Made by a program: the position numbers and the translations under genes. From Fimbriosthenelais zetlandica (lineage: Eukaryota): DNA of 64,000 nucleotides. Positions 1 to 64,000 of the stretch are shown piece after piece. Location: NCBI GenBank assembly GCA_977030845.1, contig OZ365117.1:2976001-3040000 (forward strand), written 5' to 3'. Below the pieces are notes generated by a model. It saw nothing but the letters and a program-made list of their open reading frames with translations. It made no database searches and had not been told where the DNA came from. Each line of letters begins with the position of its first letter. Within the stretch, counting starts at the first letter, position 1.

Positions 1-110
1 ATAAAAGAAAGGAGAGTTAATGCATGCATGTCCTGTGGTGTGTCTAGTCTGTTGGTCGGTAGGTGGCGTTGGTCGCAGGGGTCAAGAGGTCATACATCAG
101 TGGAACATAC

Positions 111-15400: not shown

Positions 15401-18400
15401 ACCATATTCCTCTAGGAGACGGACAGGGACATCGATCTTGCCGTAGTCTCCTGTACCGATCTCATTCTCAGCTCCAACACGGAAGTAATAATCCACGTTC
15501 TTTTGGATGTTGGAGACCACATAGGACGTCTTGTTGGCGTCGACAACACCGATGTGCGTCCATGTACCGCGGTCATCAGCCTGTTCAATGTGGTAGCAGT
15601 TAATCTTACTGCCGCCATCATTGCGTGGTTTGGTCCAGTTCAGTGTGATGGCACTCTTACCCATCTCAGTGGAGAAGATACCAGTGGGTGCTCCAGGAAC
15701 ATCTATATATAAAAGATCATTGTTAAGCATTTTCATTCATTTTCATGTATTTTCATGGCCGATTCAATCAATCTTTCAAGCCAGTGTATACAATTCACTT
15801 TTGGATAGATCGGTCGTGGAATAGTTACCGATTCTATCAGGTAACATATTCTTTACAGCAACACATTTCTTCTGATAGGTCACGTGCTTTGCCTGCACTA
15901 TCAGAAGGAAAGATTTAAGCAACTAATGCACCATAAATACAGCATCAAAATTACTTATTTCTTTATAAAAAACTCAGCAATTTAGAAATGGTGATGCTGA
16001 TTTATGGTAGTATTAAAGACAGAACTATGGAAGCAGTGACTGCTACAATAGTCTGTCAATAACAGTGAACGTGTGTCTGGATGATTTGACTCACTCTTCT
16101 CCATATACACTTTCTCTACAGCTGTTGAATCTAAAATGGACAGACGAGGAAGCACCCTATGATATTATTTCCTTTTATAAATAAAGAATAGACAAGAGCA
16201 TACAGGTCTTAAGTTTAGATGGCTATGGTTAGTATGATGGTAAGATAGACAGAGACAGAGAAGGGGACAGATTACTGAACAGAAGGACTGGATATCAGAT
16301 GGACAGAGGAAGACATAGAATTAACCAAGAAGTCATATTGAATCAGAGGGTCACCTAAGATCTTTAGCCTGAGATTGACCCCATGGTACCAACCGCCTTT
16401 CATGGTACCACCCACATTCATGGTACCAACAGCGCCTTTCATAGTACCACCCACATTCATGGTACCAACAGCGCCTTTCATAGTACCACCCACATTCAGG
16501 GCTTAATATGGACAGATCAGGGATAGGAAAAGGGGACAGAGAGAGATAGACACCTACCCATGACATGGACCTCAAACTTGGCCTCAGTGATGCCCCACTC
16601 ATTCTTGGCCACGACTCGGTAGTCGCCAGCATCATCGCGACCGACGCGACGCACAGCGAGCGATGTTGAGAAGTCTGTGGTATCGATATTAGCATGGCCA
16701 CGTGGTAGGACCTTCACTCCATCCTTGTACCACGTGATCTGTGGTGTAGGCTCACCCTCAACACTGACATTCAGCTTGAGGTTAGAACCGATGGGTAGGA
16801 GCATGTCACTGTAACGACTGTCATACTCCATGCGTGGTCCAGCTGTACCAAAAACAATTTGCTTTTTACAAATAAAATCTATTAAAAGACAATTGTTTGT
16901 TGATGATATCTTCTAACAAAATGCTCATGATAGGATAGGTGGGCAGATGCAAAAGCAGATAATCATTTAATTATCCCAAGATGTTTGATAATGTTTAACT
17001 TTTAAATGATTTTCATCATGACGATTTAATCTAAGTTAATAATTTAACATAGATTAAGTGATGTAGGTTTAAGCGTGTTCTACACTACACCGATCTCGGG
17101 TGCGATTTCATGATCTAAAAGGTCTCATCAGATCAAATTGAAGTCAGATTAAAACTCGGCATCATGTGTATGAAGATAAGATCATGATCAGGATGATTCT
17201 CTTATAGAGCTGTGCATGTCAGATCTGATGTGATTTGAGGGCAGATCTTGTATGTCAGATTTCAATCTGATCAGATCATAAATCGGTATAGTGTAGAACG
17301 CGCTTTAATTAATAAGTTAATATAGATTAAAGCCGGGACTCCACTGCTGCGATTTTGCTTGCGACACTTCTGCGACAAAGCTGATGCTTGTGAAGTTGTG
17401 TAAGAATAAAATTTATAAATTGTGGTTCAAGTGTCCAAGGCCTTAAGGCCGTCCTCCAATGGTAAATTTATCATTGAAACACAAGCATCACCTTTGTCGC
17501 AGACGTGTCGCAAGCAAAATCGCAGCAGTGGAGTCCCGGCTTAAGAGAGGGTACACAGATGTAGGTTTAGGTTACCTTTTACACGCAGGTTTGAGGTGGT
17601 GCTGGCCTGACCAAACTGGTTGCTGCCCTCACACGTATAACGTCCAGTGTCCTTGTCAAGGACATCATGGATGACGAGGGACGCGCGGGCGTCGCGGTAC
17701 TTCATGTCGTACTTCCTCCCAGGTGTCAAGGTATGGTAATCTTTACTCCTGTACAAAAGACAATCATACATGGATCAGGTGTCTTGTTACATTTCATATT
17801 GTAGCCCTACAGGTTTTAGAAATTGCACTATTTTCACAATACACAGGGCAACTGTGGAGTATTTTCAGGCAGTCTATTCATTTTTTTATTGAAAATTTTA
17901 CTAGTGAATTGTACTAAAGGATATAAGTGTTACAAACCATGCAATTTCGGGGTCAGGAACGCCGACTATTTGGCATTCTAGCACTGCGTCTTCTCCCATA
18001 CGGCAGTAAGTGTCATGTAGCCCTGCAGTTACTCGAGGAGACGACCCACCTACAATGACAAAGGTTAGGTATGTTACAGAAAGATTTGCGTTTTCCAGAT
18101 ACATTGCTTTCCCAACATTAGACTACCTCCTTTTGACGGCCCTAAAATGAACATGTTTGTTGCGTGCTATTTCCCTTCCTATGTGTTGAAAAAACCCCAA
18201 CTTCCCAATTAAATAGAGACAGGGGTTGTTTTTTATCCAAAAGTAAAAGTTTACAGCCACAAGGTTGGAACCTGAGTATTAGGTACTTACTTGGGGTAGC
18301 CTCACGGACCAGGACGCTCCTTGATGGTGGTGACGTATCACTGCGTCCCAGCTTGTTCTCAGCTGTGACACGGAACTCATACTGCGTCCCTGGTTGCAGG

Positions 18401-21400
18401 TCAGTAACGGTAAACGTAGGGTCTGGTACCTTCATTGCGATGTTAGCAACAACCCAGCTATAGGTCTGACTGCTTCTCATCTCCACGATGTAGTTGGTGA
18501 TGGGAGACCCGCCGTCTTCACGGGGAGGTGCCCAGGTCAAGGTGGCGCTGCCCTTTGATCCTAGGTTCACTTCGGGTCTTCCTGGAGCTGTAGGCTTCTC
18601 TGTTGATAAGAAATTGAGGGTTTATTTAATAATTGACAAGATTGGTAGTGCGAAATGCGGCTTGGTTGCATCTTTGCCTCAGTTATTAGAGTATGTAATC
18701 AACATGGCATAACTGAAGATCATCATCCAGCAATTTTCATCATCATAGCTCAATTTTACTGAATAAAGATACAATTAACATTGACAACATGAGTAGAGAC
18801 AGGTTCACACTTAAAAGATACAATCAAGACCTGCTTAAATGAGGTCACAACAAAAATTGTAAAAATAGACATACCGTATGGATCTTTGGCCACAACAGGT
18901 CCCACGGCTTTAGATGCCAGTCCCTGGCCAGCTTCATTCTCAGCCACTACTCTGTACTCATAGTCAGAGCCATCATAGACATTGGTGTCTTTATAGAAGA
19001 TGTCATACACCAGTCCTTTAGATGTCTTGATAAACCTGCTGCTGTATCCCTGCCTCCTCTCTACTATATAACCCTTAACTGGAGACCCTCCATCACTGTG
19101 TGGTGGGGACCATTCAATGACGATAGCGTTTCTTGACACATCTGTGATCTCCACGTTCCTCGGTTTGTCTGGGACTGTGAATGGTGATCTAACTTCTACA
19201 GCTGATGGCGTTTCACAAGGCCTGCCGGTACCTACAGAGTTCTCTGCAGCCACACGGAAGAAGTACTCATTGCCATCGAGGAGTTTACGGACACGGAAGC
19301 TGGTGCTGGTTCTGTCGACAGTGCCAGCGTTGAACCAACCTCCACGTTTAGCGTCACGACGTTCAATGACGTATCCAGTGATAGGATCACCGCCGTCATA
19401 TTCTGGTTCTTCCCAGGCCAGGGTGACAGACTCTGTGAGAATGCTCGTCACTCGGAGACTGGGTGGAGCAGATGGTGCAGCTGTAATAAAAACAATTTGT
19501 TGAATGATTGTTGGGTCGTTTCTGTGATCACCTCTAAAACTGGAGGCCTATAATGGCTGAGGTAGCCAACCAAGAGAGTAGACCATATGAGCCAATGTAG
19601 GCCAAAGTTAGGTATGTTTCTATTCCTTTTAAATTGGATGGTATTTCATCTATTTGAGGGAACAATATTAATAGTTGATTGTGATATTTTAAACATTAAC
19701 ACTTACTTTTGATTCCAACTTCAAATTCGTACTCTGCAGTGCCTGCGTTGTTCTCCAGACATAGCCTGTACTTGCCAGCTTCCTCCGGCTCTATACCAGT
19801 GATGGTTAGAGTAGAGTACTGGTCGCCAGTGTCTATATGGATGTGACCTTTCTGTGGGAATAGCTTACTTCCACCCCGGTACCAGGTGGCTTTAGGGGCA
19901 GTGCCAGAGAAGTTAACAGGTATGATGAGGGATGAGCCAGCCTTGACTGTTTGTTTGTCATGGTAGCGACGATCGACCTCGATGGTTGGTGCGACTAGAA
20001 AAAGGTATCAATCAAAGTTTTTGTTTCACACTTATCAAACATACAGTATCAGTATTGGTGAATACAAATGTTCTAAAAACCATAAAAAACTGGAGGGTTA
20101 AGAGACCTATGAACTTATGTGAGTCACAAGTCATATAAAGTCCACACTCACCAATACTACTACTGCCCCCATTCTAGGGAGGCCCTGTGTAATATTGAAG
20201 GGAATTTGGATATTTAGATCCTAAGAACTTATTTGGGACGATTGAATCAAGAGTGAACTACAATAATCATTGACTTACCATCCACAGTGAGTCTACATGA
20301 GGTGTCAATACGACCCATTCTGTTGCTAGCTTCACATCTGTATTTGCCGGTGTCACTGGCCTCTACATTGTGAATGTGGAGTGAGGCCAGGCCGTCAGCG
20401 TACGACATACGGTGTTTGTGTGATTTATAGATCTCCTTAGCATCCTTAAACCTGTAACCCAGCAAATACAAGATCAATTATTATAAGTTAAGTGTATTTG
20501 ACAACACAGTAGCAGTCTAATGGTGAAGCACTAGAATGTGTTAGCAGAAATCTAAAGATACAACACTAGGACACCATATGGCAACTCTGCATCAATTAAG
20601 GAATAATTATGGTTTTAGAAGAGCAGTATAACATTGGTTTTCCACAAGGTTTCCTGTTTAGAAAGGGACTTACCATCTGAAGTTGGCCTTGGGCTCACCA
20701 GGTGAGATTTCACACTCTAATGTGACGGGTCTGCCAGCGGTTGTACTCAGGTTCTGAAGCTTGGCAAGAACCACAGGTTCACGACCGACTGTAAAATGAA
20801 GAAACTCCAGTAAAATATTCCATAACTAGCAGAAAAAGTGACCCTTAAGCTACCAATATCTGAAGAACTGCACACAAATTTATAGGATACATGGTCTTAA
20901 GTGAAATAATGAGCCTGAGAACGTACCGACTGGATCTTTAGCTGTGACTGGTTGGGTACATTCTGAGTAAGGACTCAGTCCTGCCTTGTTTTCTGCAGCC
21001 ACTCTGAACTCATAGTCTGTATCGGCCAGTAGTCCACTCACTCTGTAGAAAGTCTCAGATGTTCTTTCCCCATCATTAGCCTTGATCCACTTGAATGATC
21101 CCACTGGGCGGTATTCTACCAGGTAATGCCTGATGTGGTTACCACCGTCTGAGAGTGGAGGCTTCCAGGAGAATTTACATGATCTCTTGGTCATGTCGGT
21201 GATGTAAGGGGCGATAGGCTCGCTTGGTTTCTGCCAGGGGTCTTTAGCAATGACTGGCTGAGATGGTCGGCTTGGTGCACCAGGGCCTACTGTGTTCTCA
21301 GCATAGACTCTGAACTCGTAAGATGAGCCCTCAGTGAGGCCTACAACATGGTAAGATGTGTCAGAGGAGCGATGGGTGGTGATTCTACTCCACATATCAG

Positions 21401-24400
21401 ATGTTCCTGCCTTCCTCTCGACCTGGTAGCCTAATATTGGTGATCCACCGTCACTGATGGGAGCAGTCCAGGCTAGATGGCATGAGTCCTTAAACACATC
21501 CATAGCTGTGACTGGCCCAGGAGCGGCGGGCACGGTGTTAGTGGCTTTAGCAGAGAAGGATTTGGATAGGTCCTCATAAGCTCCAACTCCCACCTTGTTC
21601 TTGGCCGCCACTCGGAAGATGTACTGGACGCCTTCCTGGAGTCGGGAGACTTTGTATCTGGTGTCAGACGTGGTACCCACGGGTTTCCAGGCCATGCGCA
21701 GAGCTTCACGCTTCTCTATGACGTAATCTGTGATGTCAGAGCCACCGTTGTCACGTGGTCTCGACCAGGAGAGTGTCACACTGTTGTCAGTGGAACTCTC
21801 AACTCTCAAGTCTTCTGGTGCACTGGGCTTGTCTGAAATTATAGAATTTTTTAGACATTTTTATTCAATTTCAACTTAATCTATTCTGTAACCATTCCCT
21901 GCATGGCACCTGGGTTCTTAATTCTGCCTTGTTCACCCTAGACTTAAATGACCATTTCACACTACCCCATTCTTGAACGGCCCTAAGTGGAATGATGACC
22001 AAGGAAACTACATAGAAATTATGACCTGTGAGCCTAATTTCTTCATTAGAAAGCTATAAAAGCATAATAGAAATGCATTTGATACTTGCGCTATATAAAT
22101 GAACTTTTACATTACATGAAGATGTCATGTGATTGTACTCACCTAGTACAGTGATTTTAACGTTGAGGGTTGATGAACCATGTGGGTTACTCAGTGTGAG
22201 TGTATATGTTCCAGCATCCCCCCTCTCAGCACGACCCAGCACCATTGATGTCATATTATAGATGGTATCTGTCTTGATCTTCCTCGTCTCCATCAGTGGA
22301 ACGCCGTCCTTCTTCCAGGTGACCTTGGGTTGAGGACTGGCCGTGAACTGGATCTCAATAGCAGTGCTGTCTCCAGTCTTCAGCATCAATCCCTTCTCAT
22401 ACTCTGACCCTGATGTAATCTTGGGTGGAGCTTCAACACTGACATGTCCCACTGACCTATGACCCTTGATGACGATGGCGTAATCACCGATGTCTTTACT
22501 CTCCACATTGTGGATCACCAGTCGGTGTGTGGTACCAACTACACTGATGTCGTATTTCCTATCAGAGTAGATCTCCTGGCCGTCTTTGAGCCACTGGGCC
22601 TTGGCGCGGTCCTTGGTGACTTCACATTCTAATGTGACGTCAGATCCCACACGGCTGACCTTGATGTCCTTCAGAGGTGAAATGAAGTCAATTGGTTCCA
22701 CTGTGAAAAGAGAAATAATGTGGGATAATTAAAATGACAGGCACGAACAGGTTGTAAAGTGACAAGAAACACTAAAATGTGCTGTGTAAAGCCTGGAATA
22801 CACTAATCCGATTCTCCATGCGATATCTGTGGGAAACCCCATTTCTAATGGCATTAATACAGCAGCAGTCCTATAGAGATATACCAGTATTATTACATTT
22901 TGAGCCAATGAAACTCACCATATTTAGCAGATCTTGAGGCAGGAGAAGGAGCACTAGAGCCACCTTTGTTTTCAGCAGATACTCTGAACTCGTAATCAGT
23001 CTCTTCCATCAGGTTTTTGATGTTGTAAGTCGTGCCTGTGACTTTCTCCACTGGGTTCACTGTGTCCCAGCGGTAGCCTCCCACTGTCCGCATCTCGATG
23101 CGGTAGTTGTTAATGGGACTACCACCATCTGACTTAGGAGCGGCCCAGCGGATTCTAGCGGAGTCTTTATCGATGGAGAGTATCTCTGGTTGACTGGGTA
23201 CTCCTGGTTTCTCTGTAACATGATATAACATGGGTTTCAACAAGATGGTTACACTATTACATGTCACACCCCCAATCCAAATCCGGTCCAAATCAAAATT
23301 GATCTTGCCCAGATCAAAATTTGGATCCAGGCCGACTAATGGGTAGGTAACTCCTGTGTAGGGAGGCATTGGACAATATGGGTAGGAAACTTTGCAAGAA
23401 TTGCAAGTCATGAATATCTAGTGGATATCTCAAATGATTTGGTACATAAGTTGGATGCCTCCAAGAGATAATTGCCTGGTGATTCTTGCAGTGATTCTTG
23501 CAAATGGAGCTTGTCTACAAGACCATCAACTGCAACTACATCAATTGCCCCTAGAAAATATTATTGATCTAAGGCAATTGATATTTTACTTTTTCACTTG
23601 GTCTTTTAGGGGATATCTCCCTCCACTTTCTATTATAATTGATCTAAGGCAATTGATAATTTAATTCTTCACTTGGTCGTTTAGGGAATATCTCCCTCCA
23701 CTTTCTATTATAATTGATCTAAGGTACTGGATATATTACTTTCTCACTTGGTCGTTTAGGGGATATCTCCCTCCACTTTCTATTATAATTGATCTAAGGC
23801 AATTGATATTTTACTTTTTCACTTGGTCGTTTAGGGGATATCTCCCTCCACTAACTATGATAATTGATCTAAAAAACGGAGAAACATAAGCACTCCGGGA
23901 ATAACATTTCCTTATATTCTATGGAAAAATGTGTCTTTTGAAAACATACTTATTGTAGAAAATTTCCAGAATAATTCAAATTAAAAAAAAGAAAAAGAAA
24001 TGAGCACATACCAAATGGATCTTTGACGATGACTGGTGATGTTGGGTCGCTGGGTCTGCTCACACCTGCAGCGTTCTCAGCCATCACCCGGTACTCGTAC
24101 TCATCTCCCACCTGAGCGCTGGTATCTACATGCTTCATCTCCTTGATGATGTGCCTGCTGACACGGCTCCACCTGGCACTGTATGGTGAACGACGCTCTA
24201 ACCAGTATCCCTTCACTGGTGAACCGCCATCATCACGGGGAGCGTCCCATGACAGAGACACCGAGTTCTTAGTCACGTCTGTCACTTGGATGTTACGTGG
24301 TGGGTCTGGTTCGTCTGCATCATATGACAATAGGAATTAGTATGCTAGCTTAAGGACTGGTTCCAAAGTCTCACATTAAATTATTCACCTATGCAACAAG

Positions 24401-54400: not shown

Positions 54401-57400
54401 AAAGCGCCTTCTACACTACACCGATCTGGGACCCGATTTCATGATCTTAACGATCTGATCAGATCAAATTGAAGTAAGATCGGCATAAATCGGCATAATG
54501 TGTATGAAGATCAGATCATGATCGGTGTACAGTGTGCATGTGATCTGACATGTCAGATCTGGTGCGATTTGGAGCAGATCTTGCATGTCAGATTTTGATC
54601 TGATCAGATCATAAATTGGTAGAGTGTAGAAGGCGCTTAAGACAGACACAAGTAACTGAACTTGAACACTGACCTGCAAAACTGAGTTTTCCAGTAGTGG
54701 AGAGTTTCTCGTATTTGGCAGTGTAAGCTCCCACGTCAGTGTCGTCAGCCTTCTCTATGATGAGCTGGTGAACCTTACCATCAGCCTTGATGTCAAACTT
54801 CTCATCGCGGCGGATCTTCTTCTCACCCTTGTACCATTCCAGCTTGAGGCCAGACTTGGAAATCTCACACTCCAATGTTACATTGATGTTGATCTCTTTC
54901 AGGGTGATGTTCTCAAGTTCCCGAGTAAAGACAATCTCTTCAACTTTAAGTAAACAGGAAAATAGCTCAGAAACATAAGAATATCATAAGCAGAAGATCA
55001 TGGACATCACAATGGTTTATTGACAAAAGAAAGGACAGGGCAGAAGGCAATGGCATCACACTTAAGGTGCCTTGTAAACCAATGTAATCACTGGTTGTAA
55101 AAACTACTCTGAATAGAAACTTCAAACTGGGGCTTACCATACTTGGCTGGTTTGGATGGAGGTGAGGCTTCGCCTACTCCAGCCTTATTCTCAGCAGCTA
55201 CTCTGAACTCATACTGTTTGCCTTCCTGAAGCCCCTTCACTACGGTCTTGGTCTCAGTGACTCTCTTCTCGGCCACTCTCCATTTGACATCTCCTGACAT
55301 CTTCATCTCTAGTACATAGTTAGTGATGGGTGACCCGCCGTCAGAGCTGGGTGGCTGCCATGTGACTGTAGCTTCCTCTGGAGTGATATCCTCCACAATG
55401 GGAGCATCTGGCCTGCCTGGAACATCGTATGGATTCTTAGCAACGAACCTTCCAGTGGATTCTGAAGGCTTACCGATGCCAGCTTCGTTCTCTGCAGAGA
55501 CACGGAACTCGTATTCTGATCCCTCAATGAGATCAGTGAACTCCATGACCATCTTCTTGGTGACGGTTTTGTTCACCTTGATCCAGCGAGTTCCAGTCTG
55601 CTTCTCCACATAATAACCTTTAATGGGTGATCCTCCATCAAACTCGGGAACATCCCATGTGAGTGTACATGATGAGGTGGTCACATCGCTTACTTTAACC
55701 TTGGTAGGTGGACCTGGTGGATCAAATGGTAGCCGAGCCGTCACAGCTTCATCATTCATGGCAGGGTCGCTACGACCGATGTCATTCTCAGCGAACACCT
55801 GGAACATGTAGCTGTTACCTTCCACTAGTTTAGACACGCGGAGGCTACGGCAGTCAGGGTGGGTGTTGCCAGCATTAAAGAAAGTCGACTTGCGGGTGTC
55901 TCTCTTTTCAATGATGTACTCTGTTAGATCTGACCCACCGTCTGACTCAGGCTCGTCCCAGGCCACCACAATGTAGTCTTTGTAAATCTCGGTTGCACGG
56001 ACATTCTTAGGTGGTGATGGTCGGTCTGCAAAGAGGGAAACATACATGAAAATACTGAGAATAACTAGGTGGAAAGCTTCTGACAAGTCAGCATACCATA
56101 TGGCAGCCAGCATAATTCATAAAGGCATCATTTGGTACCAGCCACTCCTGATATTGGTTTCTTCCTATAGACATAACATATGGGATTGAACAAATCAATA
56201 AAATCAAGGCAGTTGCCCTGTGGGTCACATATATGACTTACCCTTGATAGTGACAGTAAACTCTGCACTGTCTTCACCCACTTTGTTTTCAGCCACCACC
56301 TTGTAGGTACCACCGTTGATACCAGAGCAAGGTTTGATGGTCAGTGTGGAGGCGGACTCGCTGGTCTCTATCGTCACTTCACCACCAGCTGTCAGTTGGT
56401 TGTCGTTATGGAACCATGTCACTTTAGGGTTGGGTACACCACTCACCCTGACTGGCAGGGTAAGGGCTGAGCCAGCCTTCTGGACAACAGTCTCCTTCAG
56501 CCGGTCCTCATATACAATTGTTGGTTTGACTGGAAAAATGAAAGTAACAAGTGTTCAACCCTCAGATCTTGTCTCAGAGGATGTTACAGAGGTTGGTCGT
56601 TGCTGTGCAGTGACATACAAGATCAGGCTTACAAGACATTACATTATTACAATGTGATAATTATCATTGAGTATGTGAATGTACAGCAATAGAATGGAGA
56701 CAAATGTTTAGAAATACAGTAGACAAATGTTTGGGGATGCTTGAAACATGAGCTCACCATTGACACCTAGGTAGCACTCGGTGTGGCAGCGTCCTATCTT
56801 GTTGGACGCCTCACACTTGTAATGCCCAGCGTTTTTGAGTGTTGTGTCTTTGATGACCAGTGCAGCCACCATGTCATTGTAAAGCATCTCGTGGTGTTTG
56901 TCTGATAGTATGGCTTTACCATCCTTGTACCAGTTCAGGTTGGCCTTGGGGTCACCAGGCAGAATCCTCGTCTCCAAGATGATGTCTGCTGGAGCAACAA
57001 CTGTGTTGTCCTCCAAGGGCTCCTTCACCTCTGGTGCTTTGCCAACTGAAATGAAACATGATATTGTGATTTCTGCACAGGGAAATGGTGACTCAAACCT
57101 GGGGCCTATTCTATAACACTATATTTGATCAGTAAGTGGGATTTTAGTGACCCAAAGAACCAGATTTCCGTCAGAGAGAACTTACCAATAGGTTCCTTGG
57201 CCTCGACTGGTGCAGTAGGGTCAGACATGGGTCCCACCCCAGCTTTGTTCTCAGCCGCGAACCTGAACTCATAGATGTTACCCTGTACAAGCTTGGACAC
57301 GGTGTAGGAGAGACCAGAGATGGTCTCCTCCGTGACTCGCTTCCACTTGAGAGCGCCTTCGATGCGATATTCGATGACATAGTTAAAGATATCAGCTCCG

Positions 57401-60400
57401 CCGTCATCAGCCGGTGGCTTGTAGGCCAGGGAGATGGAGGTGTCCATGACCTTAGTGATGTCTGGTGGGTTAGGCTTACCAGGCTTGCCTGAAAAGGTGA
57501 AGGAGCATGACAAGTTTGGTTACGGCTCAATGGTAGATATAGGTCTTAGGAGCTGCCAAATCGAGTGACCAAGCGCCTGGGATAACTGATTTTAGAGTTC
57601 TAGCATAAATTTAATGTGATGCGTTATTAGAATATCAAAATTCCCTTCAATATTATACAGGGCCACCCTAGAATAGGGAGAATTTGATGGGACACCAAAG
57701 GAGGATAGGGGGACTTACCAAATGCATCTTTGGCGACCACTGGTTTGGTTGGGGAGCTGGGTTCACCTTGGCCCACCTTGTTGACAGCTGAGATCCTGAA
57801 CTCATATTCACTGTCCTCCATCAGGTCTGTGACTTTATATTTGAGTTCAGACACTGGCTCCTTGTTAACGACCACCCATCGTGTGCTGGTTGTCATACGG
57901 CGTTCCACCACATACCCGGTGATGGGAGAACCACCGTCTGTCTCCGGTACCTGCCATGACAGCCCAGCACTCTCCTTGTCTACATCAGACACCTCAGGAG
58001 ATTGTGGTGGCCCTGGTTTGTCTGGAGGGAAGGAATCAATACGGAAAATAGAATTTGGGAATATTTGGGTTGAATATTTAGAGAGATATTGTTTCAGGGC
58101 GCTTTTGTGGATTTACAAAGTTGTTGAAAATTTGGGTTTTTTGAAAATAAATAGATGGTAGTTTTGGTGGTGAATAATCAAAATTGTCTCTGGGATCCAA
58201 ACTAAAATATCCTAAACAAAAATTGAGGAATATTAAAAGTCATTCCTCATACTAAAATATAACTAGGCTAAGTCTAATATTCTATACTAGAACATGTAAT
58301 TAGTCTATATCATCTAAGTCTGATTCATCTAATGTCATTACATTCTAAAAAAATAAATTAAACACAAAAAACATAAATACTTCTAAAAGATATATGTTTT
58401 ATGGCTATTAAAACAAAGTGTAGGAGTGCATTCCTTGTATTGTGGAATGTACAAAATAAAATGACCCGATCCCCCCATAAACAAAGATATAATTAAATAA
58501 CTGGTAATGTTTTTCTAAATAAAATAAATAATCAGGAACGGCACAAACACAAACATATAATAGACGGAGACAGAGACGGAGCGATAGCTGGAGAGAGACG
58601 CGATGAACAACTCTCATAGAAGAGCAAAACAAAGCGGCAGTTACAGGTTTTAAAATGTCTAGATTTTTTTTATAGACTAAACCTACTTTTCTTCCAGCAA
58701 AATAGTGTATTTTTGATCAAAATGTCTGCCTTTCTATTGATAAATTGTTCATCACATAATGCAGCAAAGTGCGGGCCACAAGTGAGCACCTCAGTTTGGT
58801 TGACAACCAATCTGTTTACCTGCCAATCTTCCAGTTTTTATCATCGATGTAGTCTGGTTCTAATAATCTTACATATATCTCCAAAAAGCAGCAACATTTA
58901 AAACATCAAAAAGCAAAGATGGAGCAATGTTTTCACCTTAAAAAAGCACAAGTTAGGGGGGGGGGGGCAGTGTTGATACGGAATGTTGGTGTGATGCGTA
59001 ACCAAGACTTCCCCACATATTGTTACATTAAAACTGCTAAAAGTAACGTGATGTAACATCAAGTAACGTTGAACAGTGTATCTTACAGTGTATATGAATG
59101 ATAAAAGCGCAGAAGCATGTAAATTATGATGACAAGGAAGATTAGCCTGAAATCGTAACACTTACCAAACTGGCTTTTGGGAGTGACTGGTTTAGGAAGT
59201 TCAACCGTCGGGCCTTGGCCGACTTCATTCTCAGCCGAGACCCTGAACATGTAAGATGAGCCTTCCTTCAGTTGAGTCACTGTGGTTTCAAGGTCGTCTG
59301 ATTTCATGTCCTGGTCCCACGTACGTTTACCAGGTTCACGACGTTCTAACGTGTAACTGGTGACGTCACAACCACCGTCATCTTCAGGCTCGTCCCAGCT
59401 GAGACTCACCGAGTCCTCAGTCACAGAGGTCACCATGAACTCTTCAGGAGGTCCAGGTTTGTCTGAAAAAAAACCCAACAAGAATTACTTACTTTCCAAG
59501 TTTAGAATTGTGACAAATAGTAGGAGGAATCAAGCCCTGAAAATGAAGGATGAACTGCTAAAGATGACTAGAAAATACAATTCGCTCTACTCCGTTATGA
59601 AGTTGTCTGTTATGGGGTAACTCCACTGCACTTTTTTACCCTTGCGGCCCTTGCGGTTATACGTTGCGGATGACTTGCGGCTCTCTCACACGCCAACCGC
59701 AAGGCAGTGGAGTTATCCAAACCGCAGACCCGCAAGCACCGCAAGGGCCACCTTGCGGCCTGCGATTCGATCCAAATTTTTTGATCGGGCCGCAACAAAT
59801 CTTGCGAATAGCGGTCCTTGCGGCCGTTGAGTTTGTAGTGGAAGCAACCAAATGGAAGCACCGCCGGCTCCGCAACAGCACACAACGTAGGTCGACCAAT
59901 GAGGGTGCTAGTAGAGTTCACGTTATCCATACATCCGGTTAGCAACAAGATGGCGGGACGACGCCAACAAGCAAAAGCTACATCTCGAGGTAGGCCTAGA
60001 AGGCTAGGCCTAGGAGTAAACAGCACTAGGTCTAAGGCTGTTGTTTTCTGTTTTTCTTGGCATCATTAGCTGCTTTCTTTCGACGATAATTGCAGAAAAC
60101 AGTTGCTGCCAAAACGGCAATGATCGCCAGGTCCTCCATTTTGACCTCGACACCTGTAGTCATGGAAATACAGGTAGGTCTCTGCAGCCGCAAGGGAGCC
60201 GCCGGCTGCATAGGCTGCAGTGGAGTAGGTTCAACCGCAAGCACCGCAAGGACATCAACACCCGCAGAAAAAATAGAACGAGTAGAGCCGCAAGACGGCC
60301 GCAAGTGACTTGCGGTGCAGTGGAGTCCTGCCATTACTCAATTCCTTGGGGCAACATCTAATGTTATTCATCGGACTGGTAACTGCTAGAACTGTTCTTG

Positions 60401-63400
60401 CTGACCTTGCAAATGGCTTAGCTCTAGCGGCATGCCTTCATGACTAGAGACCCAGTCATTCAAGTTTACCACAAAAGTGTCATGATTGTCTGAACTAAAT
60501 CCAAGGAGTTGACATTGAAGTAAGATAACGTACCAATAACTTTGATGTTGATTGTGTGGGTGGCCTTGCCATACTTGTTCTCGATGTTCAGTTTGTACTC
60601 GCCGCTGTCTTTGCGCTGGACCTTTGCCATGGTGAGAGATGTCATACCATAGATGGTCTCAGATTTGATCCTCCGTGCGTCGGAGAACTTTCCGCCATTA
60701 AACTTCCACGTCACATCCGGCATGGGGTGAGCGCTGAAGGGCACTTCAATGACCTTGGCCGACCCTGCCCTCAGGACGATGTTATCTTCAACCTCGGTGA
60801 AGTCGAACTTTGGAGGTGCTGCATAACAAATATTTAAATATTTAACACTCAATTTTGGACAGAAAAATGACTGAATTGATTCATTAATTCATGACATAGT
60901 TTACCTTTGATGGTAAGGGTTGCGGTGGAGGTGAACCCCTTGATGTTGACGGAATACTTGGCTTCATCATCAGGCTGAGCGTTGTTGATGGTCAGTGTAT
61001 GTTGACCATTGGATTGTTTGATCTCGTATTTGTCAGAAGCTTTGATAGGTTTGTCACCAACAGACCATTCAGCTTTTAGACCTGATTTGGAGACCTCACA
61101 AGAGAAGACTCCAGGGATACCAACTTCCTCAAGGACAACGTCTTCAAGAGGTGTCACAAAGTTGATGGGTTCAACTGAAAATAGAGAGGAAAACAATTCA
61201 GAGATATAAGTCTATAGTCTACTTTACTCTAGTAGGATGGAAGGAGGAAGAGATAGCTTGCAACTAATGATCGCTTGGGTCTTGCTTTTTCTGTGAAATC
61301 ACATGCAATAGTGGAAAAAACCTATGAGGATGAAAGTTGTCAGCAACAAACCAAATGAACTTACCACATTTGTGAGGGAGTGAAGGATCAGAGGGAGGAC
61401 CTTGTCCAGCCTTGTTCTCAGCTGTAACTCGGAACTCGTACTCATTATCTTCCCTCAAACTTGGAATAGTAAACTTCAGATCAGTCACGGTCTCTTTCTT
61501 GTTTACAACTGTCCACTTGCGATCACCAACTTGTCTCATTTCTACGATGTAATTTGTGATCTCTGCTCCACCATCTGAGTCAGGAGCAGCCCAGGAGATA
61601 GAAGCAGTGACACCTGTTGATTCTTCAACAACAGGACGTCCTGGTTTGCCTGGTGGATCGAACGGATCCTTAGCAACAAAGCTGATGGGTTCACATGGCT
61701 TGCCTTGGCCAGCGTCATTCTCAGCGAACACTCTGTATTCATACTTCTCGCCTTCGTTTAGATCATCAAGAGCAAGCTCAAGGACCTTGACGGCTTTCTT
61801 GTTCACCTTGATCCATCTCGATCCAGAGCGTCTTTCTACATAGTAACCAGTGATGGGAGAACCACCATCAAGTTCAGGAGGTTCCCACGTCAGTTTGGCT
61901 GATGTTTTGGTGATATCATTTGCCTTGAGGTTAATTGGTGGACCCGGAGGATCTGAAAGAATACAAATTATGTGTTTTAAAAGTGAGAAACGGATTCATA
62001 AAGATGCTGTTCATGTCTAATACAAAGTATCGGTAGGACAAAAGTCAGTTGCTTACCAAATGGCAGTTTAGCAGTTACAGGTTCAGTTTGAGCTGGATCA
62101 CTTTCACCAATATCATTAACTGCTTTTATTTGGAAGATGTAATCTTTTCCTTCCACACATTTCTCCACCTTGAAGCTGAAGTCTTTGTCACTGACTTCTC
62201 CGACCTTAACAAAGGCCTCACGTTTGACGTCGCGGCGTTCTATGACGTAGCCAGTAATGGGTGAGCCTCCATCGTGTTCAGGCTTCTCCCAACTCACCAC
62301 AACAAAATCTTTGTAGATTTCTGTGGGACGAACATTCTGTGGAGGCGATGGGCGATCTAAAACAGAAGAAAAACATGTTGAATTTACTGGACTGGTCACT
62401 TAGAACATGGTTGGCACTAAACTAATATTTCTAATGCTGAAAATACGGTACCTTTGACAGTGACATCAAATTCTGCGGATGCCGAGCCTGCTACATTTTC
62501 AGCTGTCACTTTGTATGTGCCAGCATCAGCTGCTGTCAGGCCCTTCACCGCCAGCCTGGAATAGGTGCCCTGTGTCTCAATAGTGACACGGTTAGTGTTC
62601 TCTAGTGTCACATCACCTCTTGACCAAGTGACAGTTGGTGTGGGTGTACCAGTGACTGTCACATAAAAGATCAAACTTCCCTCTGCCTTCAGTGCCTGAG
62701 TCTCCTTGTACTTGTCTTCGTAGGTGATGACCGGTGCAACTGCAAAGCACAAAAACCATCATTCTCAAATTTCAGACCGTCAATAGCAAATTAAAAGACC
62801 ATAACTTTACTGATTATTGGAATATCAAGAAGATTTCTCAGTTTAAGAACGCCCAGATCAAGATTGAATAGAAGAGATCTTACTATTGACTGTGAGTGTA
62901 CATGAAGTCTCCACACGACCAAGCTTGTTGCCGGCCTCACAACGATATAGATGGTCGTCATTCAAATCTACCTTTGAAATCGTCAATGTTGCTACTTGAT
63001 TCTCATACGTCATGGCATATTTCTTGCCAGAACTAAGCTCTTCTTTGGAGTTCTTCCACCTGAAAAACGGTAGCATAATGTCCATATGAAGGGTGTAGCT
63101 TTTGAAACTAGTGTTTGGTTAAAGCACAGTGGAAACCAAAGATATTTGATAGTTAAGATAGAGTTGTTGCCTACCATTTAACCTTGGCAGCTGGATCTCC
63201 TGGCTTGATGGTACATTCCAGTGTTGCAGAGCAAGGAGAAGTCACAGTTTGGTCTTCCAGGGGTTTCACTAGTTCTGGTTTTTGCCCAGCTGAAATTGAA
63301 AAGCAAAAGACGTATATTCAATATAGAAAAAGATCAATATAGAAAGATTTTGAAACTTAGTCATGATGATATTGTTTCAGATCCAAAGGGCAGCAGTGCA

Positions 63401-64000
63401 AGGTACTTACATACGGGTTCCTTGAGAGTGACTGGCGGGTCGCTGGGATCAGACCATGGACCCTGTCCTGCCTTGTTGACAGCAGCCACACGGAACTCGT
63501 AAGTGATAGCTTCACCAAGTCTTGTCACTTTGTAGCCTGGTTCAGGTTTCTTGGTGTTGTCTGTGTCTCTGACCCAGGTGAGGGTACCTTCTATACGATG
63601 TTCCACCACGTAGTGAGTGATGGGGGCGCCACCGTCGTCAGATGGAGCTGTCCATTTAAGATCAACTGATGTTCCCCGGATGTTCTCATACTCGGCTCGT
63701 CCGGGTTTGCCTGGTTTTTCTGTAATTAACAAAAGATCAACATGAAGGTTTATTTACCATAAGATGACCAGTAACTGTGGTGATGTTCTGGTACTGAAAA
63801 GCCCAATGAAATGTTCAAATTGAGAAGGAAAGATTGGGAAGACTTACCATATGGATCCTTGGCAGTAAATGGTTCGGTTGGTGAACATGGTGGTCCAACT
63901 CCAACCTGGTTTTCAGCCATGATCCTGAACTCGTACTGATTACCTTCAATGAGTTCCTTCACCTTGTACTCGAGGTCTTTGACGGCTTCCTTGGTGATCT
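111..64000 (-). CDS. Giant titin/twitchin-family Ig-FN3 muscle protein gene (partial, 78 exons in window, extends beyond both ends)
   Basis: Successive minus-strand exons of mostly 270-312 nt carry FN3 motifs (W..P..DGG..I..Y.(I/V)E, Y.FRV.AEN..G) and I-set Ig motifs (L.C..G.P.P.V.W, D.G.Y.C/V.A.N). Boundaries are GT-AG and phase 1, except a phase-2 intron in the Trp codon of some Ig domains. The frame stays open across the joined exons. Confidence 0.96.
1437..1790 (-). CDS. 354-nt exon encoding two truncated Ig N-termini plus a charged Glu/Lys/Thr/Val-rich segment
   Basis: TTTTAG acceptor, GTAACC donor, phase 1-1, open frame: IPYFLRKLPARVEMLEGQNFSLAC...APWFVKKLPTKLEIKERNNLEIKC...EEGESEREETVTAKLTKTHVKREISETGEVHVTKKSQVIVK. 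Confidence 0.75.
4501..4682 (-). CDS. Candidate alternative terminal exon (ESAPAVELESWLRES...TSLVPRF*)
   Basis: gttacgttgacAG acceptor, phase-1 entry open for about 60 codons to TAG. It forms a GC-richer, coding-like island in AT-rich intron. Confidence 0.4.
4960..4968 (-). CDS. Candidate 9-nt microexon (G-I-Q)
   Basis: cttaacaacttatatctttcccccacAG|GAATACAAG|GTAATC, 83 nt downstream of the donor at 5051, phase 1-1. Confidence 0.45.
5052..15702 (-). CDS. Tandem array of 14 single-exon FN3 domains
   Basis: Exons 15403-15702, 14617-14934, 13986-14285, 13259-13561, 12573-12875, 11956-12252, 11040-11336, 10510-10815, 9901-10206, 8091-8399, 7427-7729, 6717-7019, 5859-6170, 5052-5357. All are phase 1-1 with lengths divisible by 3. 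Confidence 0.93.
5429..5830. repeat. 51-54-bp minisatellite, 8 copies
   Basis: TTTGTTCAG starts at 5429, 5481, 5532, 5583, 5635, 5686, 5740, 5792. Confidence 0.95.
7097..7410. repeat. Interspersed element with ACAATT(G/A)GACACC repeats around degenerate TTAGGG/CCCTAA runs (Helitron/Helentron-derivative-like)
   Basis: Several acaattggacaccc motifs, plus ttagggttaacctaaccctagccctagg...agggttagggttag at 7212-7320. Confidence 0.5.
7781..7850. repeat. 30-bp tandem repeat (GGTGATATGTGCCTAGAGGTGGTCTGGGTA), about 2.5 copies plus degenerate extension
   Basis: Directly visible. Confidence 0.8.
7924..7973. repeat. About 50-bp hairpin element (GTTTCATAAC...GTTATGAAAC); related copies at 9253-9302 and 9449-9503
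   Basis: Short inverted repeats shared by three sites. Confidence 0.55.
8421..9230. repeat. 30-bp minisatellite, 27 copies (ATTGAGTATATTGTATACATTAAGCATGGC)
   Basis: Column-aligned identical units in the 60-nt rows, with few variants. Confidence 0.98.
9577..9821. repeat. 21-bp minisatellite, about 11.7 copies (TCA(A/G)GCCTGATCCCTGCAGCA)
   Basis: Tandem units. Grows out of an about 190-bp duplication (9231-9424 vs 9425-9600). Confidence 0.95.
10231..10410. repeat. About 65-bp tandem repeat, about 2.6 copies
   Basis: GCTAAGGCA...CTGATGCCAT...TTCTAAATGCACTTAGAAACAGTT units. Confidence 0.85.
11563..11649 (-). mobile_element. tRNA-derived SINE-like head (or tRNA pseudogene)
   Basis: Minus strand GGGGAGTTAGCTCAGTTGGTTAGAGCGCC...GGCGGTTCAATCCCCCG has Pol III A and B boxes and a D-arm, but the acceptor and T stems are mispaired. 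An A-run follows about 200 nt downstream (about 11358-11366). Confidence 0.55.
15075..15286. mobile_element. PIF/Harbinger-type MITE family A, copy 1
   Basis: About 60-bp TIR AGCCGGGACTCCACTGCTGCGATTTTGCTTGCGACAC..., TAA on both flanks, 212 bp. Confidence 0.88.
16095..16130 (-). CDS. Candidate 36-nt cassette microexon (DSTAVEKVYMEK)
   Basis: Acceptor cttcctcgtctgtccattttAG, donor GTGAGT, phase 1-1, open frame. Confidence 0.55.
16382..16497. repeat. 39-bp tandem repeat, 3 copies
   Basis: CATGGTACCAACAGCGCCTTTCATAGTACCACCCACATT units. Confidence 0.9.
16558..20788 (-). CDS. Half repeat R7 (IgA-IgB-FN3x3) followed by an Ig-Ig pair
   Basis: Exons 20674-20788 + 20279-20451 (IgA), 19707-19994 (IgB VAPTIEVDRY...; absent from the ORF track, translated by hand), 18875-19480 (2 FN3), 18291-18599, 17938-18049 + 17576-17748 (Ig), 16558-16842 (Ig). 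Confidence 0.92.
17072..17304. mobile_element. PIF/Harbinger-type MITE family B, copy 1
   Basis: TIR AGCGTGTTCTACACTACACCGAT...ATCGGTATAGTGTAGAACGCGCT, TTA/TTA TSD, interior rich in GATC/AGATC motifs. Confidence 0.85.
17331..17541. mobile_element. MITE family A, copy 2
   Basis: Near-identical to copy 1, TAA/TAA TSD. Confidence 0.88.
20927..26282 (-). CDS. Super-repeat R6
   Basis: Exons 26168-26282 + 25733-25905 (IgA), 25231-25518, 24471-24773, 24012-24314, 22919-23212, 22143-22700 (IgC-IgD), 20927-21832 (3 FN3). Confidence 0.93.
22790..22850. mobile_element. Truncated Harbinger-like MITE end (family E; homologous copy at about 51428-51490)
   Basis: Both sites read TAA-AGCCTGGA.(T/C)ACACTAATC.GATTCTCCAT.CGAT. 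Confidence 0.5.
23563..23872. repeat. 75-bp tandem repeat, about 4 copies
   Basis: ATTGATCTAA recurs at 23563, 23638, 23713, 23788, 23863. Confidence 0.92.
24894..25104. mobile_element. MITE family A, copy 3
   Basis: Near-identical to copy 2, TAA/TAA TSD. Confidence 0.88.
26506..31286 (-). CDS. Super-repeat R5
   Basis: Exons 30999-31286, 30443-30730, 29598-29900, 28674-29267 (2 FN3), 27706-28560 (IgC-IgD-FN3 fused), 27173-27472, 26506-26811. Confidence 0.93.
29410..29530. repeat. Degenerate TAACCC/TTAGGG tract related to 7212-7320
   Basis: aaccctaacttaaccccaggttttaagcctaggtttaaccct...aaccctaaccctaaccc. Shares GGTTTTAAGCCTAGG with the 7.2-kb tract. Confidence 0.6.
29999..30426. repeat. 173-bp tandem duplication; copy 1 (29999-30253) carries the family D MITE, copy 2 (30254-30426) lacks it
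   Basis: Both copies run CCCAGGAGAGAAACACACTAGAAC...GAACCTTGCTTGATTTAAAGT. The length difference is 82 = 80 + TA. Confidence 0.92.
30025..30104. mobile_element. 80-bp hairpin MITE, Tc1/mariner-pogo type (family D), copy 1
   Basis: Perfect 33-bp TIR CAGTCTGTTCACTCTAAGTTGATCCGAAACCAC, 14-nt loop, TA/TA TSD. Confidence 0.88.
30925..30984. repeat. 14-bp tandem repeat, 4 copies (GCTATCTAACGAAC)
   Basis: Directly visible, about 14 nt from the donor at 30998. Confidence 0.92.
31409..31753 (-). repeat. Tandem duplications of the exon 31754 3' end plus 5' splice site
   Basis: C(T/C)TACCTAGTGG recurs with the donor AC ending at 31454, 31555 and 31668, in addition to the real one at 31753. Confidence 0.88.
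31754..42085 (-). CDS. Super-repeat R4
   Basis: Exons 41798-42085, 41276-41560, 40863-41165, 34435-35028 (2 FN3), 33947-34216, 33418-33705, 32897-33193, 32329-32622, 31754-32053. Sum 2919 nt = 973 aa. Confidence 0.93.
38200..39800 (-). pseudogene. Possible decayed pogo/Tigger-like (DDE_1) transposase remnant
   Basis: Frameshifted fragments in the expected order: SSELPELCKWFIK; ENVY/LPKWNSYVFKPLDTG (cf. pogo LPPHTSHxLQPLDVG); IFTELIVKMLRESMAR*GTITSAF; then a Cys/His remnant ICVDWLESVY*HCTG. Judged by eye, no HMM run. Confidence 0.4.
42384..52162 (-). CDS. Super-repeat R3
   Basis: Exons 52048-52162 + 51689-51861 (IgA), 51053-51340, 50329-50631, 49385-49978 (2 FN3), 48695-48964, 47989-48273, 47427-47729, 42976-43278, 42384-42683. 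Confidence 0.93.
44341..46065. mobile_element. Foldback-type (Mutator/FB-like) non-autonomous element: 1.7-kb palindrome of tandem 168-180-bp units
   Basis: Left arm 44341-45140 (GGTAGTCCTAAACACCGAAAGAATCCG...) is the reverse complement of right arm 45141-46065 (...CGGATTCTTTCGGTGTTTAGTACTACCC). No spacer. Flanks CCCCCAACAC and CTCCCAACAC form a 10-bp near-perfect direct repeat. Confidence 0.8.
46635..46643 (-). CDS. Candidate 9-nt microexon (V-P-K)
   Basis: gtcttgttctctttcacttttttacAG|TACCCAAAA|GTAAGT, phase 1-1. Confidence 0.5.
48466..48677. mobile_element. MITE family A, copy 4 (diverged)
   Basis: Same TIR ends, TAA/TAA TSD, diverged interior. Lies 17 nt from the exon end at 48695. Confidence 0.85.
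49056..49105 (-). repeat. Duplicate of the 3' splice site and first about 25 nt of exon 48695-48964
   Basis: TCACGGGTGAAGACAAAGGATTCCACTGTAAATTAAAGACAATCATGAGC vs TCACGGGTGAAGACAATGGATTCCACTGAAAAGTAAAGACAATCATGAGC. Confidence 0.88.
49165..49240. mobile_element. Diverged family D-related hairpin MITE (fragments also at about 49003-49052 and 49127-49152)
   Basis: TA-CACTCTGTCAAACCTAACTTGGACCGAAACCACCATAAAAATGTAC...TTCGGTCCAAGTTTGGACAGATTG-TA. Shares the CCGAAACCACCATA.A.ATGTAC core with family D. Confidence 0.65.
50053..50242. mobile_element. MITE family B, copy 2 (internally deleted)
   Basis: AGCGCCTTCTACACTACAC...GTGTAGAAGGTCCT, flanks TAA/TTA. Confidence 0.8.
52251..57045 (-). CDS. Super-repeat R2
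   Basis: Exons 56758-57045 (IgA), 56242-56529 (IgB), 55138-56025 (3 FN3), 54674-54943 (IgC, AAG acceptor), 54016-54300 (IgD), 53343-53639, 52813-53115, 52251-52553. Confidence 0.93.
52664..52743. mobile_element. 80-bp hairpin MITE family D, copy 2
   Basis: Same sequence as 30025-30104 with a few substitutions, TA flanks. Confidence 0.85.
53764..53892. mobile_element. 129-bp Harbinger-type MITE (family F)
   Basis: TIR AGCCTGCATTCCATCTATCAGATTATCGGGTCAA / TTGACCCGATAATCTGATAGGTGGAATCCAGGAT, TTA/TTA flanks. Confidence 0.75.
54403..54637. mobile_element. MITE family B, copy 3
   Basis: AGCGCCTTCTACACT...AGTGTAGAAGGCGCT, TAA/TAA TSD. Confidence 0.87.
57186..63289 (-). CDS. Super-repeat R1: IgA-IgB-FN3x3-IgC-IgD-FN3x3
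   Basis: Exons 63175-63289 + 62884-63059 (IgA, split in Trp), 62452-62739, 62057-62356, 61365-61952 (2 FN3), 60905-61174, 60534-60818, 59166-59462, 57719-58021, 57186-57488. Confidence 0.93.
59613..60333. mobile_element. 721-bp Harbinger-type non-autonomous element with subterminal CCGCAAG/CTTGCGG arrays
   Basis: Imperfect TIR TGGGGTAACTCCACTGCAC / GTGCAGTGGAGTCCTGCCA, TTA/TTA TSD. The ACTCCACTG core is shared with family A. Confidence 0.75.
63411..64000 (-). CDS. Last two FN3 domains of the preceding super-repeat (exons 63848->64000 and 63411-63719)
   Basis: YEFRIMAENQVGVGPPCSP and EKPGKPGRAEY...YEFRVAAVNKAGQGPWSDPS. Donors GTAAGT. Confidence 0.93.

What the first reader, a model, noticed from the sequence alone, without database searches (positions are those of the whole stretch)
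16558..64000. Giant titin-family protein built on an unusual 10-domain super-repeat (Ig-Ig-FN3-FN3-FN3)x2
Seen: the exon translations give a strict Ig-Ig-FN3x3 period. Alternate half-units differ by class. IgA (D..VV(A/G)P...L.C.I.PG.P, KY.M.Y, Y.CEA.NK.GR) and IgB (I.YD...Q..KAGS) alternate with IgC (F...L.D..V...VT.ECE(I/V)SK) and IgD (PF.G.P.P.V.W...LPDARR...IY.MTS). This makes a 10-domain, about 970-aa unit repeated six times (R1-R6) plus a half unit. Established: twitchin/UNC-22 and projectin use Ig-FN3-FN3 units, and vertebrate titin A-band uses 7- and 11-domain super-repeats. Neither matches this pattern. Inference: at about 4-4.4 nm per domain, 10 domains span about 40-44 nm, near the about 43-nm myosin filament repeat. 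This could be a separately evolved thick-filament ruler protein. I cannot exclude that this architecture is already described in some lophotrochozoan or deuterostome.
Basis: partly seen in the sequence, partly recalled or inferred. Interest (0 to 1): 0.82.

Follow-up and report, generated by a model that had tools for sequence, protein, structure and literature searches.

The report
Titin-like gene with ten-domain repeat
This invertebrate's giant titin-like muscle gene carries a strict ten-domain unit of about 978 amino acids, repeated six and a half times, that differs from the 7- and 11-domain units of vertebrate titin and so offers a second natural case for testing whether such repeats act as rulers along the myosin filament.

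Summary
The gene is on the minus strand. I built a 76-exon GT-AG model (63998..5052) that gives 8,128 aa with no stop. Its domain order is B4 B5, then (IgA-IgB-Fn-Fn-Fn-IgC-IgD-Fn-Fn-Fn) x6, a further half unit, an Ig pair, and 14 FN3.

- **Period:** 973-984 aa.
- **Position classes:** domains cluster by super-repeat position in trees, 0 of 200 shuffles as good.
- **Conservation:** a second species keeps the repeats copy for copy (63-89% identity, pN 0.18 against pS 0.70). The annelid Ridgeia piscesae has the IgC-IgD-Fn piece.
- **Variant:** a distant unnamed relative has a homologous ten-domain unit of about 974 aa in which position 5 is an Ig instead of an FN3.

The pattern matches neither titin (7/11 domains) nor twitchin (Fn-Fn-Ig). 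However, its Ig-Fn-Fn-Fn module aligns contiguously with human titin C-zone domains T5-T7, so the building block is shared and only the higher-order arrangement is separate. The terminal Ig-Ig plus FN3 run resembles the C-terminus of arthropod Sallimus-type titins.

A thick-filament ruler role is plausible (10 straight domains of about 44 Å give about 44 nm) but untested. I found no description of this repeat in the literature held here. The scan had already noted the same repeat on the adjoining window (s1-231893).

The parts
63411..63998 (-). End of the preceding super-repeat: a partial B4 FN3 cut by the window edge, and the B5 FN3 exon.
Evidence: HMM map and class assignment.
57186..63289 (-). 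Super-repeat 1: A1 (split by a phase-2 intron), A2, A3, A4-A5, B1, B2, B3, B4, B5.
   Evidence: It is orthologous to the first unit of L001.
52251..57072 (-). Super-repeat 2. A3-A4-A5 are fused in one 888-nt exon (56025-55138).
   Evidence: Pfam on all ten pieces.
42384..52162 (-). Super-repeat 3. It contains a 4.1-kb intron (47427 to 43278) between B3 and B4.
31754..42085 (-). Super-repeat 4. It contains a 5.8-kb intron (40863 to 35028) between A3 and A4.
26506..31286 (-). Super-repeat 5. B1-B2-B3 are fused in one 855-nt exon (28560-27706).
   Evidence: This exon found the Ridgeia B1-B2-B3 homologue.
20927..26282 (-). Super-repeat 6. B1-B2 are fused in one exon and B3-B4-B5 in another.
18291..20788 (-). 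Half unit: A1 (split), A2, A3-A4, A5.
16558..18049 (-). Terminal Ig pair of the A1/A2 kind. It is divergent (61 and 74 bits).
5052..15702 (-). Run of 14 FN3 domains, one exon each, all exons phase 1-1.
   Evidence: The tail forms its own group in the FN3 tree.
136..422 (-). A further FN3 domain after a 4.6-kb gap that has no recognised domain. Whether it belongs to the same transcript is not shown.

Best explanation
The window holds the A-band-type part of a giant titin-family muscle gene of a protostome-like invertebrate. The only named carrier of the same half-unit is an annelid.

**Building block.** The basic unit has five domains. An I-band-type Ig comes first, followed by an A-band-type Ig-Fn-Fn-Fn module that is homologous to the one in vertebrate titin.

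**Super-repeat.** Two diverged versions of this unit (A and B) alternate. Together they form a 10-domain super-repeat of about 978 aa, which is old, constant in length and conserved copy by copy.

**Most likely function (inferred).** The repeat region probably lies along the myosin filament and offers a periodic set of binding surfaces to myosin or paramyosin rods, as titin's C-zone does. The Ig-Ig plus FN3 run after it would be the equivalent of the thick-filament-anchoring C-terminus of arthropod Sallimus.

**What is shown and what is inferred.**
- Shown: the gene structure, the repeat, its conservation and its homology to titin domains.
- Inferred: the thick-filament location, and any match to the 43.5-nm three-crown repeat.
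For: **Gene and repeat**
- Intact 76-exon reading frame.
- I-set and fn3 domains.
- Position-specific clades, period of 973-984 aa and autocorrelation peaks.

**Conservation**
- Copy-for-copy orthology in a second species, with pooled pN 0.18 against saturated pS 0.70.
- The B1-B2-B3 half-unit start is present in Ridgeia piscesae.
- A homologous 10-domain unit of 963-988 aa in a distant relative has an Ig at position 5 instead of an FN3. The domain count and length are kept while one domain changed type.

**Relation to titin**
- Best solved-structure matches are titin chains from the human cardiac thick filament. A3-A4-A5 aligns with T5-T7.
- IgA is closest to titin I-band Ig I65-I70.
- Arthropod titin-like (Sallimus-type) proteins end in Ig-Ig plus 3-4 FN3, and these fall in the same classes.
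- Published spacing of about 44 Å per straightened titin domain.
Against: - No expression, splicing or localisation data could be obtained; no sequencing run was listed.
- The organism is not identified.
- No kinase and no elastic region lie inside the window, so membership of one particular titin lineage is not proven.
- If the chain were kinked as in vertebrates (about 39 Å per domain), 10 domains would span about 39 nm rather than 43.5 nm.
- The argument from conserved domain count rests on a single divergent lineage.
- The class HMMs were built from the window itself. Only the trees and the foreign loci are independent evidence.
Confidence: 0.6

Rival explanations
1. The ten-domain unit is only a frozen record of duplication history: a five-domain block duplicated, diverged and was then amplified in pairs. 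The protein binds the thick filament or links filaments in a generic way, and the period is not matched to any partner.
For: - The A and B halves are clearly paralogous, position by position.
- Relatives exist with only two half-units (L005, P0188, P0251).
- Twitchin-type proteins work with simple Fn-Fn-Ig repeats.
Against: - Unit length is held within about 1% across six copies.
- Each copy keeps its own identity across saturated synonymous divergence.
- The distant variant keeps ten domains and about 974 aa although one domain changed type.
Confidence: 0.25
2. The repeat is a periodic template, but for a partner with a repeat near 38-39 nm rather than the 43.5-nm myosin repeat. Candidates are the thin-filament regulatory repeat or a paramyosin-related spacing.
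For: - 978 aa per unit against 1,084 aa for titin's 430-Å unit.
- This gives about 39 nm if the packing per residue were the same as in vertebrates (plus arithmetic).
Against: - The FN3 and second-position Ig domains are of the A-band, myosin-binding kind.
- No actin-binding linker of the kettin type was seen between domains; the linkers are 0-18 aa.
Confidence: 0.12
3. The stretch is not a functional muscle gene: either a decaying repeat array or an extracellular Ig/FN3 adhesion protein.
For: Ig and FN3 domains also build adhesion receptors. Contactin, Robo and receptor phosphatases appear far down the hit lists.
Against: - 8,128 codons are open across 76 exons with consensus splice sites.
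- There is strong purifying selection.
- Titin matches are about 100 orders of magnitude better than those to adhesion proteins.
Confidence: 0.03

Closest known systems
[quoted passage not shown]
   Same: - Built of I-set Ig and FN3 domains, with position-specific conservation.
- Old copies at about 45% identity to each other.
- The Ig-Fn-Fn-Fn module is shared: A3-A4-A5 aligns contiguously with T5-T7, including the W-x-K-x-N motif of the middle FN3.
   Different: - 10 domains and 978 aa, against 11 domains and 1,084 aa.
- Every A-band-type Ig is preceded by a second, I-band-type Ig.
- No Ig-Fn-Fn triplet and no 7-domain D-zone type unit in the window.
- A kinase was not seen.
Twitchin / projectin (A-band titins of nematodes, insects and others)
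   Same: Giant Ig/FN3 proteins associated with thick filaments. Individual FN3 and Ig domains are similar (twitchin 3UTO, E about 1e-16).
   Different: Their core is Fn-Fn-Ig, with some Fn-Fn-Fn-Ig, as in the Anopheles, Anneissia and Capitella proteins mapped here. They have no tandem Ig pairs inside the repeat and no 10-domain period.
Sallimus / I-connectin type 'titin-like' proteins of arthropods
   Same: They end in Ig-Ig followed by an FN3 run. The Ig pair scores as A1-A2 and the FN3s as the tail class. This matches the window's terminal Ig pair plus FN3 run.
   Different: - Only 3-4 terminal FN3, against 14.
- One Ig-Ig-Fn... unit instead of 13 units amplified as a super-repeat.
Unnamed relative L004 (ENA assembly ERZ27333047)
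   Same: - Homologous A1, A2, B1 and B2 classes in a tree.
- Ten domains per unit and a period of 963-988 aa.
- At least 5.5 copies.
   Different: - The unit is Ig-Ig-Fn-Fn-Ig-Ig-Ig-Fn-Fn-Fn: an Ig related to B1 stands where the window has the A5 FN3.
- About 16 kb of coding sequence without introns.
Myomesin / M-protein
   Same: Local order Ig-Ig-Fn-Fn-Fn. Automatic annotation names some echinoderm relatives this way.
   Different: Myomesin is a single Ig-Ig-Fn x5-Ig x5 protein of about 1,500 aa at the M-band. It has no repetition of the unit.

Membership tests
Titin / connectin family (giant sarcomeric Ig-FN3 proteins) | Chains of I-set Ig and FN3 domains whose closest relatives are titin domains. 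| tested here: met
   Pfam I-set and fn3. Best PDB matches are titin 8g4l_bm and 8q6t_I, E 1e-146 to 1e-159.
Titin / connectin family (giant sarcomeric Ig-FN3 proteins) | Ig/FN3 domains arranged in a higher-order super-repeat with position-specific conservation. | tested here: met
   Trees, period, autocorrelation and a second species.
Titin / connectin family (giant sarcomeric Ig-FN3 proteins) | Super-repeat of the vertebrate kind: the 7-domain Ig-Fn-Fn-Ig-Fn-Fn-Fn and the 11-domain C-zone pattern. | tested here: not met
   The domain string is (IIFFF)n throughout 63289-18291. Vertebrate titin fragments in the same search show IFFIFFF and IFFIFFFIFFF.
Titin / connectin family (giant sarcomeric Ig-FN3 proteins) | Serine/threonine kinase domain near the C-terminus. 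| tested here: inconclusive
   No kinase in the ORFs of 1-16500. The gene may continue beyond the window start. In relative L005 the reading frame stops after the FN3 run at what looks like a splice donor.
Titin / connectin family (giant sarcomeric Ig-FN3 proteins) | Elastic PEVK-like region and tandem-Ig I-band part in the same gene. | not tested
   Lies outside the window. It is known only from earlier unchecked notes (s1-231898).
Titin / connectin family (giant sarcomeric Ig-FN3 proteins) | Location along the thick filament in the A-band. | not testable with these tools
   Needs microscopy. No sequencing runs were listed.
Twitchin / projectin | Core of Fn-Fn-Ig repeats. | tested here: not met
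   No Fn-Fn-Ig period in the window. Compare twitchin-type strings.
Sallimus / I-connectin type titin | C-terminus made of Ig-Ig followed by a short FN3 run, without a kinase. | tested here: inconclusive
   A terminal Ig pair plus FN3 run is present. But there are 14 FN3 and the true C-terminus was not found.
Myomesin / M-protein | Single Ig-Ig-Fn x5-Ig x5 architecture of about 1,500 aa. | tested here: not met
   13 tandem units and no Ig x5 block.

The most novel reading that the evidence does not exclude
A protostome titin has built its own thick-filament template from the same Ig-Fn-Fn-Fn module as vertebrate titin. Its ten-domain unit of about 975 aa would, when nearly straight, equal the 43.5-nm three-crown myosin repeat, with each five-domain half spanning 1.5 crowns. 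The domain count would be under selection, since a distant lineage kept ten domains when one FN3 was replaced by an Ig. This would be a second, independent instance of a titin ruler. It would contradict the common statement that invertebrate thick filaments lack titin.
Probability: 0.3. Interest if true: 0.85.

Novelty: new variant of a known kind. Interest (0 to 1): 0.62.

Why it matters
The titin-ruler idea rests almost entirely on vertebrates, where the 11-domain unit equals the 43-nm myosin repeat. Here there is a differently composed but equally strict super-repeat, conserved copy by copy, and a relative keeps the domain count while one domain changed type. That makes a natural experiment. 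If the unit spacing in the A-band of this animal is commensurate with its myosin crowns, periodic templating of thick filaments by titin-like proteins is older or more repeatable than thought. If it is not, position-specific super-repeats can persist for other reasons, which would weaken the vertebrate argument. The finding also bears on how the single chordate titin and the two protostome titins are related.

Tried and rejected
- **Sequencing runs.** Two searches listed none, so there is no RNA evidence and read laying was not used.
- **Identifying the organism.**
  - The protein atlas gave only generic titin clusters.
  - The neighbour gene of L005 turned out to be PPIL4, which is too conserved to name a taxon.
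  - The assembly and run accessions occur in no held paper.
- **Fragments from other phyla.** Named pieces from Capitella, Lottia, Helobdella, Asterias and Amphiura found with the FN3 triple are Fn-Fn-Ig or FN3-only, not the same architecture.
- **FN3 tail orthology.** One-to-one orthology between the window's 14 tail FN3 and the 14 of L005 was not found. The equal number may be coincidence.
- **Papers not held.** Ohtsuka et al. 2011 on amphioxus connectin, and the id I tried for Steinmetz et al. 2012, are not in the library. I cannot exclude that a figure in one of them shows this pattern.
- **Circularity of the class HMMs.** They were built from the window, so their calls on the window are circular. 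I relied on the trees and on foreign loci instead.
- **The 543-5032 region.** The ORFs tried here (including 1354-1815 and 4504-4743) gave no credible Pfam match.

Full report
**What is there.** The window has no gaps, and the coding strand is the minus strand. Pfam assigns I-set or fn3 to each of ten consecutive exon-sized open frames between 57519 and 51651. Two HMMs built from the window's own pieces mapped every domain on that strand. The map reads: two FN3 at the upper edge, thirteen units of Ig-Ig-FN3-FN3-FN3, one further Ig pair ending at 16559, fourteen FN3 between 15697 and 5074, and one more FN3 at 411-136. One first-half Ig exon was below threshold and was found by eye at 26282-26168.

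**Gene model.** I enumerated GT/AG pairs between neighbouring coding blocks and scored each candidate junction by splice consensus plus domain-HMM score. This gave 76 exons from 63998 to 5052.
- The exons join into 24,385 nt and 8,128 codons without a stop.
- Every intron between domains is phase 1.
- The only intra-domain introns are phase 2 and split the first Ig of some units into 115 + 173/176 nt.
- All other exons are multiples of three, as in titin genes.
- Exon fusion varies between copies. For example, A3-A4-A5 form one 888-nt exon in unit 2, and B1-B2-B3 form one 855-nt exon in unit 5.

**The super-repeat is real.**
- In an Ig tree, first-position and second-position Igs separate (97*). 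The even-unit Igs form their own clades: IgC 96*, IgD 99*.
- In an FN3 tree, seven position labels need six changes, the minimum possible, and 0 of 200 shuffles did as well.
- Mean identity is 36-49% within a position. It is only 25% between IgA and IgC or between IgB and IgD, and 32-43% between different FN3 positions.
- Successive IgA starts lie 973-984 aa apart.
- Residue autocorrelation peaks at 974, 1951 and 2929, clearly above the peak at 484.

The unit is therefore ten domains of about 978 aa, present six times plus a half. The last Ig pair (18049-16558) is of the A kind and is divergent.

**Conservation elsewhere.**
- *Second species.* A contig pair from another assembly (L001/L002, ERZ25767047) shows A1-A2-A3-A4-A5-B1-B2-B3-B4-B5 three times in order.
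  - Its units match window units 1, 2 and 3 one to one, at 63-89% identity against 35-65% to other copies. The exception is the first three domains of unit 1, which match only weakly (46-55%).
  - Over these pairs pN is 0.18 while pS is 0.70, which is saturated. The copies are therefore old and under purifying selection.
- *Annelid.* The IgC-IgD-FN3 exon finds a named protein only in the annelid Ridgeia piscesae (50% identity). That protein scores as B1-B2-B3 with wide margins.
- *Distant variant.* An exhaustive HMMER search gave L004 (ERZ27333047), with 16 kb of uninterrupted coding sequence.
  - It carries at least 5.5 units of Ig-Ig-Fn-Fn-Ig-Ig-Ig-Fn-Fn-Fn with a period of 963-988 aa.
  - Pfam confirms that the fifth domain is I-set in four copies.
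  - A joint tree places its Igs with the window's A2 and B2, and places its first-position Igs in the same group as the window's A1. Its B1-position Igs and the extra Ig both fall in a B1-related group with the window's B1, and the extra Ig forms its own clade there.
  - Ten domains and about 974 aa are thus kept although one FN3 is replaced by an Ig.
- *Short form.* Another relative, L005 (SRR8185553), has 31 Ig, then FFF-II-FFF-II and 14 FN3.
  - Its frame ends in ...RIFGKSLF. The window's fourteenth tail exon reads on as ...RIFGKISFLL.
  - Both look like read-through of a phase-1 donor, so the true C-termini are open.

**Relation to known proteins.**
- The FN3 triple and the second-position Igs match titin chains of the human cardiac thick filament best. 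A3-A4-A5 aligns contiguously with positions 380-622 of the 1,084-aa super-repeat chain, that is T5-T7.
- IgA matches titin I-band Igs I65-I70 best.
- Each five-domain unit is therefore an I-band-type Ig placed in front of titin's Ig-Fn-Fn-Fn module.
- Vertebrate titin fragments in the same search show IFFIFFF and IFFIFFFIFFF. Twitchin-type proteins show IFF repeats ending in IIFFIIF-kinase.
- Arthropod 'titin-like' (Sallimus-type) proteins end in Ig-Fn-Ig-Ig-Fn x3-4. Their Ig pair scores as A1-A2 and their FN3s as the tail class.
- Hemichordate twitchin-like proteins have FN3 runs of 15-18 followed by IFF repeats. A continuation of the window's gene into such a part cannot be excluded.

**Literature.**
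- The strings Ig-Ig-Fn3-Fn3-Fn3 and '10-domain super-repeat' occur in no held paper as a repeat unit. The hits concern only myomesin and titin's P-zone.
- Hanashima et al. 2025 do not treat it.
- Earlier notes of this scan report the same repeat continuing upstream, an elastic region about 34 kb further on, and a second titin-like gene with a unit of about 690 aa 2.7 Mb away. These are untested leads.

**How it probably works.**
- By homology with titin's C-zone, whose domains bind myosin tails at about 40-Å intervals, the repeat region most likely lies on the thick filament.
- The same preprint reports that eleven domains fit 430 Å only because of three kinks, and that a straightened chain has about 44 Å per domain.
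- Ten straight domains would then span about 440 Å, close to three 145-Å crowns. A five-domain half would span one and a half crowns, which would explain why the functional period is ten and not five.
- With vertebrate packing the unit would instead be about 39 nm.

This step is inference. No expression or localisation data were available.

Noticed in passing
window 44341-46065, inside the 4.1-kb intron 47427 to 43278: Long open frames on both strands with mirrored peptide repeats. This fits the 1.7-kb foldback palindrome noted earlier (s1-203976). It sits between the B3 and B4 exons of unit 3, and no domain is missing there.
   Followed up: no
window 8315-9236 and 9483-9842: Two minisatellite arrays, read as repeating peptides in several frames. 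They lie in the 1.5-kb intron between tail FN3 exons 9 and 10.
   Followed up: no
window 63289-16558, exon sizes: Exon fusion differs between otherwise equivalent units.
- A1 is split by a phase-2 intron in units 1, 3, 6 and 7 and in the terminal pair, but is intact in units 2, 4 and 5.
- A3-A4-A5, B1-B2-B3, B1-B2, B3-B4-B5 and A3-A4 are each fused in single copies.
This points to repeated intron loss.
   Followed up: partly
window 47989 (donor after B2 of unit 3): The only donor consistent with the domain frame is weak (GTTGGT). A stronger out-of-pattern donor lies at 47886. This could be an alternative splice site.
   Followed up: no
window 1354-1815 (-): A 154-aa open frame with two short stretches that look like Ig first strands and a Glu/Lys-rich part. 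It has no Pfam match. It lies in the 4.6-kb gap between the fourteenth tail FN3 and the FN3 at 422-136.
   Followed up: partly
window 14934-14617 (-): The second tail FN3 is aberrant. It lacks the DGGS motif and sits on the longest branch in the FN3 tree.
   Followed up: no
L003 (Ridgeia piscesae contig JAODUO010005921.1): B1-B2-B3 occurs on the plus strand and B1-B2-B3-B4 on the minus strand of the same 8-kb contig. This is an inverted duplicate or an assembly artefact.
   Followed up: no
L005 (SRR8185553 contig), 1-16840: A relative with giant exons: 31 tandem Ig, then only two half-units, an Ig pair and 14 FN3. It is followed by unrelated genes on the other strand (ANKRD40-like, PPIL4).
   Followed up: partly
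L001 498-2700 compared with window unit 1: A1-A3 of unit 1 are much less similar to their presumed orthologues (46-55%) than the rest of the unit (63-72%). This could relate to the patchwork homogenisation noted earlier (s1-231890).
   Followed up: no
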